This document shows, piece by piece, positions 501 to 117,594 of a stretch of DNA of 124,000 nucleotides. The stretch lies in assembly GCA_951406725.2 (NCBI GenBank), contig OX597817.1:117944001-118068000 (forward strand), given 5' to 3'. The stretch is from Octopus vulgaris. Its lineage: Eukaryota. The position numbers and the translations under genes were made by a program. The notes below the pieces were generated by a model. That model was not told the origin of the DNA, made no database searches, and saw only the letters and a list, made by a program, of their open reading frames with translations. Positions within the stretch are counted from its first letter, which is position 1. The number at the start of each line of letters is the position of its first letter.

Positions 501-866
501 TTTGCGTAATAAGATAAAAAAACCAAGGCTGTATAGATATTAGAGCATTTATAGATGGAAAGCCTTACAGTTGTTTCTAGGATATTTATTAATAACATCC
601 CTTCATCAGAGACGGTGTGAGAGGAAAGTTAATTCATAGTTAGTTTAGATGTGACACAAAATAGAGTGAGGTGGAGGAAAGAAAATAGATGCAAGATATG
701 TATGGGTATTTTGCATCACATCTAAACTAATTATGACTTAATTTTCCTCTCACACCCTCTCCGATGAAGGGATATTATAAAAAAATATCCTAGAAATAGC
801 TGTAAGACCGATCTATAAATGCTCTAATATCTATACAGCCTTGGTTTTTTTATCTTATTACGCAAA
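501..866. repeat. Divergent inverted repeat (~155-bp arms) of PLE pseudo-LTR type, with a degenerate hammerhead motif in each arm
   Basis: 501-~660 is the reverse complement of ~709-866, and the outer ~55 bp are essentially perfect. Minus arm: CTGATGA(609-603)-GGAT..ATCC-GAAA-CAACTG-TA. Plus arm: CCGATGA(761-767)-GGAT..ATCC-GAAA-TAGCTG-TA-AGACC. Confidence 0.75.
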
Positions 867-914
867 AGCTTCATATATTTATATATATATATATGTATAT
901 ATATATATATATAT

Positions 915-1395
915 GCAAATACCATAAGGGCACAGATAGTGTGCCTAAAGCCACCTGGAGACGATGATCTCCTGGTGCTAAAAGCTACAGTAACACCCAT
1001 CCTTTGTAGTTAGCCATATTGAGATGGCTATTATACTTTACATTGTCGAGCGGTTACTGTGTACATCTCGTTCAGAGATTTAATAATGCTTGCAGACAGT
1101 TTTTCGAAATCAGTGACGGAAGTTACTAGAAAAACACATATATTTGCTTACAGGCTTTCCCTTTCATCGTGATCCGGTGATTACCACCCGTTGACAAGAG
1201 GCAGCAACCTCGAAACCGCGGTCCGGTGCGTATCACTTAGGCTTACAAGAAAGGGATGGCCTCCCTTTGCAAATACCATAAGCGCACAGATAATGTGCCT
1301 AAAGCCAGCTGGAGACGATGATCTCCTGGGGCTAAAAGCTACAGTAACACCAACCCTTTGTGGTTAGCCATATTGAGATGGCTATTATACTTTAC
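915..1395 (+). mobile_element. 1.36-mer tandem of a 354-bp unit carrying a type I hammerhead fold (retrozyme or PLE pLTR-like)
   Basis: 127-bp direct repeats at 915-1041 and 1269-1395 (period 354). The HHR fold lies at 1177-1236, between them. Confidence 0.7.
1177..1236 (+). ncRNA. Type I minimal hammerhead ribozyme motif with two core substitutions
   Basis: Helix I GTGAT..CACCCG/CGGTG..ATCAC; core TTGACAA at 1191-1197 (consensus CTGANGA); helix II GAGG-CAGCAA-CCTC; GAAA 1212-1215; palindrome ACCGCGGT; GUC cleavage triplet ending at 1223. Confidence 0.7.
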
Positions 1396-3298
1396 GTATC
1401 TATCTCTCTGTACATAAACACACATGCACATATATACATTCATAAATATCTGTTTTGCATCTATATATATATGCATTCATACATATATAGATAGATAGAG
1501 AGAGAGAGAGAGTGAGAGAGAGAGAGAGAGAGAGAGAGAGACTGACAGACACAGATATGTCTGTCTTTATTTATTTATGCTTGAATGTGTGTATGTTTTC
1601 ATGCTTGTATAACTTGAATTTTAAAATGTAGGTAACATGCTTAAGAAAAATCTACGTATGATGGACGATGATGTTAATTTTAAAATAAAAGCTGTTATTT
1701 ATAGCTAGAAAGAAACTAAATAAAAGAAACCGGAATTAGGAGGTATATATACAGGAGCTTCGGCTGTTGCTGACGATACTGATTCCATTAAAAGAGCGAT
1801 TTTGTATAAGCTGAAATTTATATGCAGGTAACAATGAGAAATATCTCAAACGCCTTATTGTCAGTTTTCATACAAATTATAAAATTTATGATTCTAATAT
1901 TCTCGATATCAGGCGTGGTTTATTTCTTGTTTGAAACTGCAGATTACACATTTATGGTTAATATTTCACATATATTTCTTGCTTAAAACTTTAAATTCCC
2001 AAGGGAGATATATGTTCTAAAAAAATGAAGAACAAATAAATATATATATATATATAAATAACTATGACTTATTTCGCATCGGTTAACTGTCAGCATTATA
2101 TCTAACATTATGTTTAATATGATTTTTCTCGTTCTTTTTTCTTTCTTTTTAGTGTAATACAGTAAACAATAGAAAATAGTCAATACTACAATCTGTATTA
2201 ACAATTTGCTGTAAATAATTATAAGTTTACGCAGGAAAATATGTAAGGCAATAAAATTGTGTGTATGTGCGTATATACAGAATACCATATATATATATAT
2301 ATATATATATATATTGTGTATAGATATATATACAATATATATATATATAAATACTTAAATATATGCTTATAAATATGCATATATATACACATAATCATAT
2401 ATATATATATGTATATATATATATACATATATATATATATATATATATACATCTAATATAGGATAACATTTTTCGAAAAAAAATTTATCTATGGCTAACA
2501 TATTAAAATATACCTTTAAAGGTTAAATTATATATATATATACATATACGGGAAATCGTGTTTATGTGCGGGTATGTGTGGAAGCTCGTGACTTAGTAAA
2601 TTTGTGATTTCCATTCTTGGAGCGGTATGTTCGGAGCATTTCGTTTCACGTTGCTCCGCTCACTTCGTTGGCAAAATCGATTGTTCCTGTGACGGACCGC
2701 TGTTCCCTCCAGGGATGGGGGGTATTTACGTCACGGAATCCAAGAAACCAGTCTTATGAAGAAGTAGTTGATCACACTGCCGGTCTCAATATATATATAC
2801 ATTCTAATTTTTTGCCTGCTTTGAAATAAACCCCTTACTGTAACTACACAGTATACTTTCAGGTGGCAAGAATTGGTTTGTAGGTGTATTTTTTAAAATC
2901 TAATTTTTCCCAAATATTCCTACAACAGAACGTCACAATCTGTTTTCTATCTATCTATTGCCTTACATATTTTTCATATTCCGATTTTGTTTTTGTATAT
3001 GCCATATCTAGCGTATTCGTCATAGCATGATTTCTGCTCAAATTATTTTTGCCTTCACTGTGTTCTTATAAAAATGATTTACTTACTTATATATTTGCAA
3101 AGATCTTTATGTGTTAGCATTATATTATAATTGTTAATTTAGTGTTTAAGATTAACAATACAGTCTTTTCCTACGGGGAACCTAAGTACTGACATTAATT
3201 TATCACAAAATTCTTTTTCACTGGGAGTGGAAGAGGGTTTATTGTTTATATTCCTCATGTGTCTGATTGTATCCAAGTGTTATACTTCATTTATATCA

Positions 3299-3513
3299 AC
3301 GAGGATTGCTGAAAAGTTCCTGGCTTTAAGGGCGTCGCGAAAGGAGTGGTTGGAGTCACAACATTCCAAGTTCTTTTACAGTACTTAATATAACTGAAGG
3401 ACTGCTTCAATGAGTGTCTGAATCTTAGAGGGCAAAATATTAAATGAAATCATAATTAACTGACCCACCCGTAATTTTTTATACCCAATGCAAGGAACTT
3501 TTCAACACTCTTT
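3299..3513. mobile_element. Short mariner-derived MITE-like remnant
   Basis: CGAGGATTGCTGAAAAGTTCCTGG at the left end and GGAACTTTTCAACACTC at the right end form imperfect terminal inverted repeats. Confidence 0.45.
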
Positions 3514-115346: not shown

Positions 115347-115770
115347 ACATTTTTTTCTCTCCTTGCTTTTTTTGTGTCCCTATCTGGAGCGTAGGCTCGA
115401 AACGTAAAAGACCTTTTCTATTCCTGAGCGTTATAGTTATACATCTGTTTGTTTTGTACACCACCTCTCTTCGTCTTTTCTTTTTTCGTAAACTTTCCGT
115501 ATATATATACATACATATATATATATATATATATATATATATATATATATATATATATATATATATATATATATATATATATGTATGTATGTATGTATGT
115601 ATATATATATATATATACGGAAAGTTTACGAAAAAAGAAAAGACGAAGAGAGGTGGTGTACAAAACAAACAGATGTATAACTATAACGCTCAGGAATAGA
115701 AAAGGTCTTTTACGTTTCGAGCCTACGCTCCAGATAGGGACAAAAAAAAAGCAAGGAGAGAAAAAAATGT
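115347..115770. repeat. Near-perfect convergent inverted repeat (~152-bp arms) around (TA)n
   Basis: 115347-115498 mirrors 115618-115770; arms contain GAG-CGTAGG-CTC-GAAA-CG-TA (3' half of an HHR, 5' core deleted). Confidence 0.9.
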
Positions 115771-115855
115771 TATATATATATATATATATATATATATACA
115801 TATATATATATATATATATATGTGTGTGTGTGTAAATTAATATGTCACCATTATT

Positions 115856-116003
115856 CAATAGCCAAGATAAAACTCTGATTTTCGGATGCCGAAGTGGAAA
115901 TCCACAGCAACATCTTTTCGGTTAGATGGCCACATAACCGAAGAGATGGTGTTGTGGATTTCCACTTCGGCATCCAAAACTCAGAGTTTTATCTTGGCTA
116001 TTG
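115856..116003. repeat. Divergent inverted repeat (~70-bp arms) with degenerate hammerhead motifs
   Basis: Plus arm ATAA-CCGAAGA-GATG...CATC-CAAAA-CTCAGAG-TT-TTAT; minus arm CCGAAAA-GATG...CATC-CGAAA. Confidence 0.7.
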
Positions 116004-116709
116004 TATAATTGTAACATATTATTTTATAGATAAATTTTTTCTATTTACATAATATTGAGATCTCTTTCTTTCATTTGTTGTCTTACCGTTTTTACCAATA
116101 TATATATATATATATATATGTGTGTGTGTGTGTGTGTGTGTGTGTGTGTGTGTGTGTGCATGTTTGTGTGTCGGTATTTGTCTCCCAACATCGCTTGACA
116201 TTGGATGTTGGTGTGTTTATATACCCGTAACTTAGCGGTTCGGCAAAAGAGACCGATAGAATAAGTACTAGGCTTACAAAGAATAAGTCCAGGGGTCGAT
116301 TTGCTCTTCTAAAGGCGGTGCTCCAGCATGGCCGCAGTCAAATGACTGAAATAAGTAAAAGAGTAAAAGATTAAGATTATTTGTACAAATTTGTTTTCAA
116401 ACGCAGCTTTTTGTTGCTGACCTATGCATCCTTTCCTAAATTCATACGAATAACCTCAAAGGCCTGACGCACCCGTACTCACATATAGACATATATTGAT
116501 ATAATGTACCTATATATATATATATATATATAAAATTACAAATTGAGATAGGGGCTGTGAGTGCAACCCACTATGGGATAACATGTATCCAATATACTGC
116601 TAGTAAAGCACCCAACAAAGTTAATACATAAATGTTAAGAATTGCGATGCAATTAGTTCATTCACTGTATTATATGGGCAAAGGTAAAATGTTTTACCAC
116701 AAATTAATA

Positions 116710-117594
116710 ATACAAAATAAGAAAATGGAGAAATGCATCTTAATCAATAATCAACTACCAGATAATACCCAATCATATAATTTATTAAACCACTACATAT
116801 GAACATTAATGTCAAACATAATAATATAGAAGAAAACAAGGTACATCAATGAGTAATAAGATACCATAAGTACAGTATGTATAAGTGAATATAAATAAAT
116901 ACAAATATAAATATAAACTACATTTTACAGCTGTTTCAGCCATGCAGATATGGGTGCCTCATTATGCTCATATTAGCCATGCGTGGTAGGTTCATATGTA
117001 GTTATAAATGAGACACTTACAAAAATATCCCAAGGCCTCTTCAGAGATTATGAAGAACAAACTAAATAGAACATATGTATGTATATTGTTGTATATTATT
117101 ATTATGTATATATATATATATATATATATATATGTATAGGAGTATGGGTATATGCACTCATATGTATGTGTATATTATATATTATGGGTATGTACCCACT
117201 CTTGTATGGGTGTACCTCCTCTGATTTTCCTATTTAATTTAGTTTGTTCTTCATAATCTCTGAAGAGGCCTTGGGATATTTTTGTAAGTGTCTCATTTAT
117301 AACTACATATTAACCTATCACACATGGCTAATATGAGCATAATGAGGCACCCTTATCTGCATGGCTGAAACAGCTGTAAGATGTAGTTTATATTTATATT
117401 TGTATTTATTTATATTCACTTATCCATGTTGTAATTATTGTATCTTATTACTCATTGATGTACATTGTTTTGTTCTATATTATTATGTTTGACCTTAATG
117501 TTCATATGTAGTGGGTTAATAAATTATGTGATTGCGTATTATCTAGTAGTTGATTATTGATTAAGATGTATTTCTCCATTTTCTTATTTTGTAT
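116710..117594. repeat. Divergent inverted repeat (~360-bp arms) with a hammerhead core in both arms
   Basis: 116710-117070 mirrors 117233-117594 with modest divergence. Confidence 0.9.
117256..117382 (+). ncRNA. Type I hammerhead ribozyme with a complete consensus core
   Basis: ATCT-CTGAAGA(117260-117266)-GGCC-[~92 nt]-GGCT-GAAA(117367-117370)-CAGCTG-TA(117377-117378)-AGAT; palindrome ACAGCTGT; GUA triplet. Confidence 0.75.

What the first reader, a model, noticed from the sequence alone, without database searches (positions are those of the whole stretch)
501..117594. A dense, multi-family population of minimal hammerhead ribozymes, each family with its own palindromic helix III
Seen in sequence: at least 12 sites follow the type I order helix I - CUGANGA - helix II - GAAA - helix III - NUH - helix I'. 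They lie at 565-620(-), 755-810(+), 1177-1236(+), 4497-4532(+), 16527-16612(-), 22175-22215(-), 42813-42902(-), 44670-44718(+), ~100027(+/-), 112917-112955(-), 115870-115990(+/-) and 116925-117050(-)/117256-117382(+). The flanking sequences are unrelated between families. Helix III is always too short to fold intramolecularly and is instead a self-complementary word that differs by family: ACAGCTGT, ACCGCGGT, ACGCGCGT, ACGT, ACATGT, ACTCAGAGT. Established: Penelope-like elements carry minimal HHRs with palindromic helix III that cleave as dimers. Inference: the palindromes may act as family-specific pairing codes, so a transcript crossing this locus could self-cleave or trans-cleave only with its own family. 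About one motif per 10 kb suggests a very large ribozyme repertoire in this genome.
Basis: partly seen in the sequence, partly recalled or inferred. Interest (0 to 1): 0.85.

Follow-up and report, generated by a model that had tools for sequence, protein, structure and literature searches.

The report
Hammerhead motifs in Penelope-type retroposon copies
Most of the flagged sites are real copies, mostly decayed, of short retroposon families that carry the minimal dimer-type hammerhead ribozyme already known from Penelope-like elements, so the window is a good example of known biology rather than a new system.

Summary
Ten of the 12 listed sites lie in repeat families with hundreds to tens of thousands of copies in this 2.8 Gb genome. 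For six families (A, B, C, E, F, J) I saw multi-copy alignments. They show a type I minimal hammerhead: a CUGANGA-type core, a perfectly paired helix II that differs in every family, GAAA, a short self-complementary helix III and a non-G cleavage-site base. H and D are repeat families, but their consensus motifs could not be checked. Two sites (about 100027 and 115870-115990) are plain palindromes.

Only 1-2 window copies still pass a strict descriptor (117256-117382+ and 1188-1226+). The others carry inactivating changes.

The elements show the insertion signature of Penelope-like elements (PLEs):
- 3' ends at (TA)n microsatellites.
- Head-to-head inverted 5'-truncated partner copies.
- Partial tandems, and two alternative 3' ends.

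The genome holds thousands of GIY-YIG endonuclease copies, many inside intact 781-aa frames, and family H lies 0.7-1.4 kb downstream of that domain.

The core variants found (U3-A8, U4C, an extra base after A9) are all published.

The "family-specific pairing code" idea fails, because unrelated families share the same helix III word. The large-repertoire inference holds: one family alone has about 23,000 motif copies.

Verdict: new members of a known kind.

The parts
489..663 (-). Family A element, left arm of a head-to-head inverted pair. Hammerhead relic at 565-620: CUGAUGA core and a broken helix III word (ACAACTGT).
   Evidence: (94% to the family A consensus).
707..878 (+). Family A element, right arm, with its 3' end at a (TA)n tract. 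Hammerhead relic at 755-810: CCGAUGA (U4C), GAAAU and a 3 bp helix I.
914..1395 (+). Family B insertion of 1.36 units (355 bp unit plus 128 bp of the next unit), preceded by (TA)n. Hammerhead at 1177-1236 (core 1188-1226): UUGACAA (U3-A8), helix II GAGG/CCUC, helix III ACCGCGGT, C17.
4426..4680 (+). Family C element with its 3' end at (TA)n. Hammerhead relic at 4497-4532: CUGACGA, extra A, GAGC/GCUC, and GGAAC in place of GAAAC.
16470..16680 (-). Family D repeat (about 80-85% identical copies, often in inverted pairs). The motif at 16527-16612 has CUGACGA and GAAA but no valid helix III or cleavage site. An inverted partial copy lies at 16670-16729(+).
   Evidence: The family consensus was not obtainable.
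22121..22354 (-). Family E element beginning at a (TAA)n/(CAA)n tract. Dead hammerhead at 22175-22215: AUGAUGA, with helix III and the 3' strand of helix I deleted.
42632..42945 (-). Family F element with its 3' end at (TA)n. Hammerhead at 42813-42902 has a 7 bp helix I and helix III ACGCGCGT, but G8 is changed to A.
42957..43051 (+). Inverted, 5'-truncated partner copy of family F, head-to-head with the copy above. It holds the 3' half of the hammerhead.
44547..44781 (+). Family E element after a (TAA)n tract. Hammerhead at 44670-44718: CUGAUGA, extra A, GGCU../..AGCC, GAAAC GU U. Helix I is broken by a 1-nt deletion.
112856..113040 (-). Family H sequence, which elsewhere lies in the 3' region of autonomous Penelope-like elements. 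Its 3' end is at (TA)n. Motif at 112917-112955: UUGAUAA (U3-A8), GGUUC/GAACC, GAAAC AU GU U. Helix I is weak. The 5' limit was not determined.
116710..117067 (-). Family J element, 5'-truncated inverted arm. Hammerhead at 116925-117050 has one helix I mismatch (AAAU for AGAU).
117068..117594 (+). Family J element, 5'-truncated, with its 3' end at (TA)n. It holds the only fully canonical intact hammerhead in the window, at 117256-117382: AUCU / CUGAAGA / GGCC...GGCU / GAAA / CAGCUGU / A / AGAU, with a loop II of about 90 nt.
99960..100088 (.). It is not a hammerhead: there is no helix II, valid helix III or helix I around its CTGATGA.
115833..116026 (.). It is not a hammerhead.

Best explanation
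The window is littered with insertions of several unrelated short retroposon families: A about 172 bp, C, E and F about 200-310 bp, B a 355 bp unit, J at least 630 bp. Family H, in contrast, is the 3' region of an autonomous element.

Each family carries, 65-220 nt from its 3' end, a minimal type I hammerhead whose helix III is only a short self-complementary word. Two copies are therefore needed to build an active double hammerhead.

The families are mobilised by the reverse transcriptase and GIY-YIG endonuclease of Penelope-like elements, which nick (TA)n tracts. This leaves 5'-truncated copies, partial tandems and head-to-head inverted partners.

Cleavage can only be expected where same-strand tandem copies are co-transcribed, as in the 10-unit family B array at C4:13.62 Mb. 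[quoted passage not shown] That RNA may circularise and serve as a template for copying of more than one unit.

Shown here: motif anatomy, family membership, copy numbers, insertion architecture, and the link of family H to GIY-YIG.
Inferred from the literature: dimeric cleavage, circular intermediates, and mobilisation of the non-autonomous families by PLE proteins.

Most dispersed copies, including nearly all in this window, are single and mutated, and so are inert relics.
For: 1. Repeat families. Candidates of the tool's loose first look (only about 40 were aligned per family): A 2779, B 3514, J 1375, F 529, E 2265, H 1556, D 192. Family C has 22,855 motif copies against a control of 1.

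2. Motif at family level. The A, C, F and J consensuses pass the descriptor. In seven motifs (six family consensuses plus the single window copy of H), helix II is fully paired in seven different sequences and helix III is always self-complementary.

3. Family F. N7 takes all four bases while the rest of the core stays fixed in most copies, and helix I shows one compensatory A-U to G-C change. Rfam Hammerhead_1 matches F copies at 19.7-23.5 bits, E=0.016-0.27, and the model consensus is almost the F sequence.

4. PLE insertion signature.
- 3' ends at (TA)n for A, C, F, H and J.
- Head-to-head inverted 5'-truncated partners in 12 of 21 independent B loci, about 8 of 30 A loci, 3 J loci and the F locus.
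- Partial tandems in B.
- B 3' ends are bimodal at unit positions about 130 and about 177. This resembles the optional PLE 'tail' produced by two RT start sites (PMC11167929).

5. Autonomous partners. GIY-YIG (PF01541) gives 5955 candidates. Of 150 scored, 148 passed, all over the family cut-off, and at least 20 lie in intact 781-aa frames. Six family H hits lie 676-1439 bp downstream of a GIY-YIG hit on the same strand, where about 0.01 is expected by chance.

6. Literature. Minimal hammerheads in PLE pLTRs, consensus families, an unpaired base after position 9, U3-A8, a palindromic helix III and opposite-strand pairs 100-700 bp apart are described in PMC4209133. The PLE insertion structure and (TA)n bias are in PMC8557442. 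Tandem non-LTR retrozymes are in PMC7229834 and in the 2026 preprint 10.64898/2026.07.22.740005.
Against: - No RT/GIY-YIG frame lies next to any window copy. None of the top hits of A, B, D, E, F or J is near a GIY-YIG hit, so their mobilisation by PLE proteins rests on insertion architecture alone.
- Rfam models do not reach gathering score for any family and do not see A, B, C, E or J at all.
- Within-family covariation is weak, with one event in F.
- The majority core in A (86 of 100 copies) and C (78 of 100) is CCGANGA. U4C is reported to lower activity considerably in vitro (PMC3088659).
- PLE hammerhead mutants did not impair insertion in vitro (PMC11167929), so cleavage may not matter for spread.
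- The exact family H motif occurs only 15 times, and not in the GIY-YIG-linked copies.
- No RNA data were available.
Confidence: 0.85

Rival explanations
1. The hammerhead fold in the short families is kept for a reason other than cleavage. It could be the RNA feature by which the PLE reverse transcriptase picks its template, or simply a passenger inherited from the pLTR.
For: - The only sequence shared by the unrelated families is the hammerhead motif near the 3' end.
- The two families whose majority core is U4C reach very high copy numbers.
- Hammerhead mutants did not affect insertion by a purified PLE protein, and no reads ended at the cleavage site (PMC11167929).
- Naiad PLEs thrive without hammerheads (PMC8557442).
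Against: - Family C also has about 22% canonical U4 copies, more than CpG decay alone predicts, so an active version may drive the amplification.
- Helix III self-complementarity and a non-G base at position 17 are kept in every family. These matter for cleavage rather than for a simple binding hairpin.
- A U4C viroid hammerhead is still functional in vivo (PMC3088659).
Confidence: 0.25
2. One reading: each family's palindromic helix III is a private pairing code, so that RNAs dimerise and cleave only with their own family.
For: - Seven different words are seen in nine families: ACAGCTGT, ACGT, ACGCGCGT, ACCGCGGT/ACTGCAGT, ACATGT, ACAATTGT and ACCGGT.
- Predicted homodimers of F and A form the 8 bp intermolecular helix, with gains of -14.9 and -13.3 kcal/mol.
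Against: - A and J share ACAGCTGT, and C and E share ACGT, although the families are otherwise unrelated.
- All words share the outer AC...GU pairs.
- Family B carries ACCGCGGT, ACUGCGGU and ACUGCAGU side by side, which is the pattern CpG decay produces on its own.
- In the published model the partner is the neighbouring copy on the same tandem transcript, so no code is needed.
Confidence: 0.07
3. The inverted pairs are miniature DNA transposons with terminal inverted repeats and a TA target, and the hammerhead-like strings are incidental.
For: The A and J sites in the window are inverted pairs next to TA-rich sequence.
Against: - Most genomic copies are single arms: 22 of 30 A loci and 26 of 30 J loci.
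- Partner arms are truncated to different lengths, always at the inner 5' side.
- Family B forms partial tandems and a 10-unit array.
- Four family consensuses independently pass a hammerhead descriptor.
Confidence: 0.04
4. The motifs are chance matches in AT-rich sequence.
For: Two of the listed sites are plain palindromes. Several others match only if core mismatches are tolerated.
Against: - Shuffles give 0.0-0.4 hits per window, against 1-2 intact motifs observed.
- Four of the seven sequences scanned (six family consensuses plus the window copy of H) pass the descriptor.
- Intact motifs occur about once per 28 kb in unrelated flanks, against once per 730 kb in shuffles.
- The backwards-read control for the family C motif gives 1 hit against 22,855.
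Confidence: 0.02

Closest known systems
Minimal hammerhead ribozymes of Penelope-like elements (Cervera & de la Pena 2014, PMC4209133; Lunse, Weinberg & Breaker 2017)
   Same: - Type I topology with a short helix I (4-7 bp).
- An unpaired base between A9 and helix II (families A, C, E).
- Helix III reduced to a palindromic word.
- U3-A8 core variants (B, H).
- Many consensus families per genome.
- Pairs on opposite strands 100-700 bp apart.
- Position near the 3' end or in the pLTR.
   Different: - Most copies here sit in short elements without an ORF; only family H was tied to a GIY-YIG frame.
- Families A and C have a U4C majority core.
- Families J and F have unusually long helix II insertions (about 90 and 55 nt).
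- The closing 10.1-11.1 pair is G-U in J and A/A in family A and in one F subfamily.
Metazoan non-LTR retrozymes (Cervera & de la Pena 2020, PMC7229834; Li, Clavereau & Pollet 2026 preprint)
   Same: Family B matches on several points. It has a 355 bp AT-rich unit and tandem arrays (10 units at C4:13.62 Mb). Its type I hammerhead has a 4 bp helix II and a longer, interrupted helix I. Autonomous PLEs coexist in the same genome. The preprint argues that such elements derive from PLE pLTRs.
   Different: - The family B core is U3-A8.
- Most B copies are dispersed 1.3-1.8-unit insertions with inverted partners rather than long arrays.
- Circular RNA was not tested.
Rfam Hammerhead_1 (RF00163)
   Same: The family F motif is nearly identical to the model consensus aUcca gCUGAcGAG...CGAAACGcgCGUCc uggAu, including the zero-loop palindromic helix III.
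   Different: Scores of 19.7-23.5 bits are below the gathering score of 34. Families A, B, C, E and J give no hit at E<=10.
Schistosome Sm-alpha / Sj-alpha SINE-like hammerhead elements
   Same: Short, high-copy, non-coding retroposons that carry a type I hammerhead.
   Different: Those elements have a tRNA-derived pol III promoter and a stable canonical hammerhead. No tRNA-like gene was detected here, and the insertion architecture is PLE-like.

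Membership tests
Hammerhead ribozyme, type I minimal form | Conserved core C3-U4-G5-A6-N7-G8-A9 and G12-A13-A14-A15.1 | tested here: met
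   Met for the consensuses of F, J and E. B and H have the published compensating U3-A8 pair. A and C have U4C in 86% and 78% of sampled copies, and canonical U4 in the rest.
Hammerhead ribozyme, type I minimal form | Helices I and II paired, with the sequences free to vary (covariation) | tested here: met
   Across families, helix II is 4-8 bp and fully paired in seven different sequences. Helix I is fully paired over 4-7 bp in A, C, E, F and J, interrupted in B and weak in H. Within family F there is only one compensatory event.
Hammerhead ribozyme, type I minimal form | A15.1-U16.1 pair, short self-complementary helix III, and a cleavage-site base that is not G | tested here: met
   ACAGCUGU/A, ACGU/U, ACGCGCGU/C, ACCGCGGU/C and ACAUGU/U.
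Hammerhead ribozyme, type I minimal form | Score at or above the Rfam gathering threshold for a hammerhead model | tested here: not met
   No gathering hit in the window. F copies score 19.7-23.5 bits against 34. There is no hit for A, B, C, E or J. Long loop II insertions and variant cores explain the shortfall.
Hammerhead ribozyme, type I minimal form | Site-specific self-cleavage, as a dimer for this form | not testable with these tools
   Only thermodynamic dimer predictions were possible. F and A form the intermolecular helix III.
Penelope-like elements and their non-autonomous derivatives | Reverse transcriptase plus GIY-YIG endonuclease ORF next to the hammerhead-bearing repeat | tested here: inconclusive
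   Met for family H only: six loci have GIY-YIG 676-1439 bp upstream on the same strand. It was not found beside any window copy or beside the top hits of the other families. Those elements are too short to encode it.
Penelope-like elements and their non-autonomous derivatives | 5'-truncated insertions, partial tandems (pLTR) and an inverted 5'-truncated copy at the 5' end | tested here: met
   (B in 12 of 21 loci, A in about 8 of 30, J in 3 loci) and for F. The arrangement is always 5'-to-5'.
Penelope-like elements and their non-autonomous derivatives | Insertion bias for (TA)n microsatellites | tested here: met
   The 3' ends of the A, C, F, H and J copies abut (TA)n, and B is preceded by it. 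Family E sits at (TAA)n instead.
Penelope-like elements and their non-autonomous derivatives | Optional short 'tail', seen as two alternative 3' ends | tested here: met
   Family B copies end at unit position about 128-134 or about 165-181. The difference is about 47 bp, against 30-40 bp in PMC11167929. This was seen in family B only.
Non-LTR retrozymes | Tandem repeats of 150-450 bp, each with a type I hammerhead | tested here: met
   Family B array of about 10 units of 355 bp, each with an intact U3-A8 motif and a perfect 6 bp helix I.
Non-LTR retrozymes | Expression as unit-length linear and circular RNA | not testable with these tools
   No transcript data were available.

The most novel reading that the evidence does not exclude
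In this genome the hammerhead fold may serve mainly as the handle by which PLE enzymes recognise and copy short parasitic RNAs, with catalysis largely dispensable. Unrelated families share nothing but this motif near their 3' ends. Two families whose majority core is the weakly active U4C variant are very abundant; family C has about 23,000 motif copies.
Probability: 0.15. Interest if true: 0.6.

Novelty: new member of a known kind. Interest (0 to 1): 0.3.

Why it matters
The window shows at small scale how Penelope-type retroposons and their hammerhead motifs fill an animal genome. At least nine motif families were seen in 0.4 Mb. Extrapolating, the whole genome would hold on the order of 100,000 intact-looking motifs, on a par with the richest cases published.

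It also offers natural material for two open questions about these ribozymes:
- Does cleavage matter for transposition? Family C has U4C and U4 subfamilies that can be compared directly.
- What makes a short RNA a template for PLE enzymes?

It does not reveal a new kind of ribozyme or a new pairing code.

Tried and rejected
- Rfam scans of the whole window, at gathering score and by E-value. The output was swamped by TA/TG microsatellite 'miRNA' noise, and no hammerhead was among the 150 top-scoring rows shown per half.
- ORF and Pfam searches for a PLE protein in the window. These found only a Helitron, a LINE-type RT and a Tc1-like fragment, and nothing upstream of the family H copy.
- Do family B 5' ends coincide with the predicted cleavage site (unit position 312/313)? 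A small cluster starts at about 305-311, but the junctions include 4-8 nt upstream of the site, so this is not evidence for cleaved templates.
- Within-family covariation in F. There is only one compensatory event, which is too little to count on its own.
- Helix III changes in family B as compensatory evolution. The series CCGCGG, CUGCGG, CUGCAG keeps pairing, but it is exactly what CpG decay on both strands gives, so no selection can be claimed.
- ARAGORN, to check the tRNA-like sequence upstream of one family E copy. No gene was called.
Consensus sequences for D and H, and the hammerhead state of the GIY-YIG-linked H copies, could therefore not be obtained.
- The Lunse et al. paper is not held in the library.

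Full report
**Observation**

Few of them are intact hammerheads.

- Rfam gives no hit at gathering score in the window. The E-value scans are dominated by microsatellite noise, and no hammerhead is among the 150 top-scoring rows shown for each half; 63 and 102 lower-scoring rows were not displayed.
- A strict type I descriptor finds only 117256-117382(+). It requires CUGANGA, helix II, GAAA, a self-complementary A...U helix III, a non-G cleavage-site base and helix I.
- Allowing the published U3-A8 and U4C cores and a 3 bp helix I adds 1188-1226(+).
- Dinucleotide shuffles of the window give 0.0-0.4 hits.
- The other listed sites deviate in the core or helices. Examples are CCGAUGA at 755, GGAAC at 4497, AUGAUGA at 22175 and CUGAGAA at 42813.
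- About 100027 and 115870-115990 are plain inverted repeats.

**The sites belong to repeat families**

The genome is 2.8 Gb in 227 contigs, and the window is C4:117,944,001-118,068,000. Ten of the 12 listed items fall in dispersed repeats.

| Family | Window sites | Candidates of the loose first look, or copies |
|---|---|---|
| A | 565(-), 755(+) | 2779 |
| B | 1177(+) | 3514 |
| C | 4497(+) | 5 copies in the 0.3 Mb of sampled loci; 22,855 motif copies |
| D | 16527(-) | 192 |
| E | 22175(-), 44670(+) | 2265 |
| F | 42813(-) | 529 |
| H | 112917(-) | 1556 |
| J | 116925(-), 117256(+) | 1375 |

The families share no similarity with one another, apart from 15 nt of the hammerhead in A and J and a low-complexity TA-rich match between C and J.

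**The motif at family level**

| Family | Helix I 5' | Core | Helix II region | GAAA + helix III | N17 | Helix I 3' |
|---|---|---|---|---|---|---|
| F | AUCCAUA | CUGANGA | GGAAU...AUUCC | GAAA CGCGCGU | C | UAUGGAU |
| J | AUCU | CUGAAGA | GGCC...GGCU | GAAA CAGCUGU | A | AGAU |
| E | GACAC | CUGAUGA | A GGCUG...CAGCC | GAAA CGU | U | GUGUU |
| C | GUUU | CCGACGA | A GAGC UCC GCUC | GAAA CGU | U | AAAC |
| A | GUCU | CCGAUGA | A GGGAUAUU...AAUAUCCU A | GAAA CAGCUGU | A | AGAC |
| B | interrupted | UUGACAA | GAGG CAACAA CCUC | GAAA CCGCGGU | C | interrupted |
| H (window copy) | weak | UUGAUAA | GGUUC UCAA GAACC | GAAA CAUGU | U | weak |

- The consensuses of A, C, F and J pass the relaxed descriptor, within 1.8 kb of sequence scanned. 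The shuffled window yields 0.17 hits per 124 kb.
- Helix II is fully paired in seven different sequences, and helix III is self-complementary in all seven.
- In F, position N7 takes all four bases while the rest of the core stays fixed in most copies. The innermost helix I pair changes from A-U to G-C in one subfamily.
- Rfam Hammerhead_1 matches F copies at 19.7-23.5 bits (E 0.016-0.27). The model consensus is almost the F sequence, including the zero-loop palindromic helix III. The 55-nt loop II keeps the score under the gathering value of 34.
- The other families are not seen by Rfam at all.
- Predicted homodimers of F and A form the intermolecular 8 bp helix III. For the other families the prediction is ambiguous.

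**State of the window copies**

- Intact: J(+) at 117256-117382, and B at 1188-1226 (U3-A8).
- H at 112917-112955 has a complete core and helices II and III but a weak helix I.
- Inactivated by a single change: F (G8 to A), C (A13 to G) and J(-) (helix I mismatch).
- Broken helix III word: both A copies.
- Broken helix I, or deletions: both E copies.
- Cannot be judged: D.

No two same-family motifs lie close together on the same strand. The A and J pairs are inverted, so a read-through RNA would form a long hairpin and not a double hammerhead.

**What the elements are**

- Their 3' ends abut (TA)n for A, C, F, H and J. B is preceded by (TA)n, and E starts at (TAA)n.
- Many insertions have a head-to-head, 5'-truncated inverted partner. 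This is seen in 12 of 21 independent B loci, about 8 of 30 A loci, 3 J loci and the F locus.
- B occurs as partial tandems of 1.3-1.8 units, and as one array of about 10 units at C4:13.62 Mb. Each array unit has an intact motif with a perfect 6 bp helix I.
- B copies end at either of two positions about 47 bp apart.

These are the published hallmarks of PLE insertions: 5' truncation, pLTR-forming partial tandems, an adjacent inverted 5'-truncated copy, (TA)n preference (PMC8557442), and an optional tail caused by two RT start sites (PMC11167929).

**Autonomous PLEs in this genome**

- Pfam GIY-YIG gives 5955 candidates. Of 150 scored, 148 passed, all over the family cut-off, and at least 20 lie in intact 781-aa frames with identical scores.
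- Six family H hits lie 676-1439 bp downstream of a GIY-YIG hit, on the same strand and in the same order, where about 0.01 such pairs are expected by chance. H is therefore part of the 3' region of an autonomous PLE.
- The other families are short elements with sharp 5' ends (A about 172 bp, E about 200 bp, F about 250-310 bp) or a 355 bp unit (B). They are best read as non-autonomous derivatives.
- B fits the description of metazoan non-LTR retrozymes (PMC7229834), which a 2026 preprint derives from PLE pLTRs.
- No PLE protein is encoded in the window itself. The RT at 83.9-85.7 kb is of LINE type.

**Abundance**

- The 23-nt family C motif with up to 2 mismatches occurs 22,855 times (control 1). 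The exact 30-mer occurs 10,147 times.
- In about 228 kb of non-redundant flanks of unrelated loci, eight independent motifs pass the descriptor. These include two further families, with helix III ACAATTGT and ACCGGT.
- That is about one per 28 kb, against one per 730 kb in shuffles. Extrapolated, it gives roughly 100,000 genome-wide. The flanks may be richer in repeats than average.

**Core variants**

- U3-A8 (B, H, and one extra family) is a known natural covariation of the C3-G8 pair (PMC4209133; PMC3088659).
- The extra base after A9 (A, C, E) is a stated feature of PLE hammerheads.
- U4C is the majority state in A (86 of 100 sampled) and C (78 of 100). It is known from a viroid, where it lowers activity in vitro but is tolerated in vivo.
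- In C, the 22% share of canonical U4 is higher than CpG decay alone should give among copies with four other intact CpGs. Both versions probably amplified. This step is inference.

**The pairing-code idea**

- Seven helix III words are seen in nine families. A and J share one, and C and E share another.
- B carries three interconvertible words.
- In the published model the partner is the next copy on a tandem transcript.
- The idea is not supported.

**Mechanism**

Most likely, shown in part: PLE enzymes copy RNAs of these families into (TA)n tracts. Tandem source loci give transcripts in which neighbouring hammerheads pair through helix III and cleave, releasing unit RNAs that may circularise. 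Dispersed single copies are inert.

Whether cleavage is needed for spread is open. The U4C families, together with the in vitro result that hammerhead mutants still insert, leave room for a non-catalytic role.

**Verdict**

The identification as PLE-type minimal hammerheads is correct, and the code hypothesis is unsupported. The finding adds new family members to a known kind of element.

Noticed in passing
window 57397-62569 (-): A Helitron. A 1421-aa open frame carries Helitron_like_N and PIF1 helicase domains, followed by a 311-aa frame with the Pif1 2B domain. It coincides with the GC-rich block (45% GC) at 56-64 kb.
   Followed up: partly
window 83953-85725 (+): A LINE-type reverse transcriptase (YADD motif, RVT_1), read in one frame with two in-frame stops. 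It is not a Penelope-like element.
   Followed up: partly
window 86765-87187 (+): Fragment of a Tc1/mariner-type transposase (HTH_Tnp_Tc3_2).
   Followed up: no
G000, many contigs (for example C16:20838796, C2:17355966, C4:115257867): At least 20 GIY-YIG hits with identical scores lie inside intact 781-aa open frames. This suggests a very young, possibly still active Penelope-like element family. One GIY-YIG hit (C4:118076551) lies 8.5 kb beyond the window's right end.
   Followed up: partly
G000 genome-wide, family C motif: Among exact 30-nt family C motifs, 78% have C and 22% have U at core position 4. The U share is higher than CpG decay should give, so two subfamilies (U4C and canonical) probably both amplified.
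   Followed up: partly
L044:386-471(-), L044:2298-2383(-), L076:1996-2081(+), L079:2080-2117(-): Two further hammerhead families that are not in the window. One has CUGAAGA with helix III ACAAUUGU. The other has UUGAAAA (U3-A8) with helix III ACCGGU.
   Followed up: no
G000:C4:13620759-13624379: A tandem array of about 10 family B units (355 bp). Each unit has an intact U3-A8 hammerhead and a perfect 6 bp helix I (CGUACG/CGUGCG). Dispersed copies mostly have a C-U mismatch there. The array is a candidate source locus.
   Followed up: partly
window 44500-44565 (+): A sequence resembling a tRNA-derived SINE head (GTAGTGGTTAAGAG...GGTTCGATTCC) lies just before the (TAA)n tract that precedes the family E copy. 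ARAGORN calls no tRNA there.
   Followed up: partly
window 119296-119383: A nearly perfect 88-nt hairpin around a TA-rich loop. It scores below threshold against several miRNA models on both strands. It is likely an inverted-repeat element and not a miRNA.
   Followed up: no
window 115445-115672: A roughly 230-nt palindrome around a long (TA)n tract, next to the 115833-116026 inverted repeat. Several foldback structures cluster within 1 kb here.
   Followed up: no
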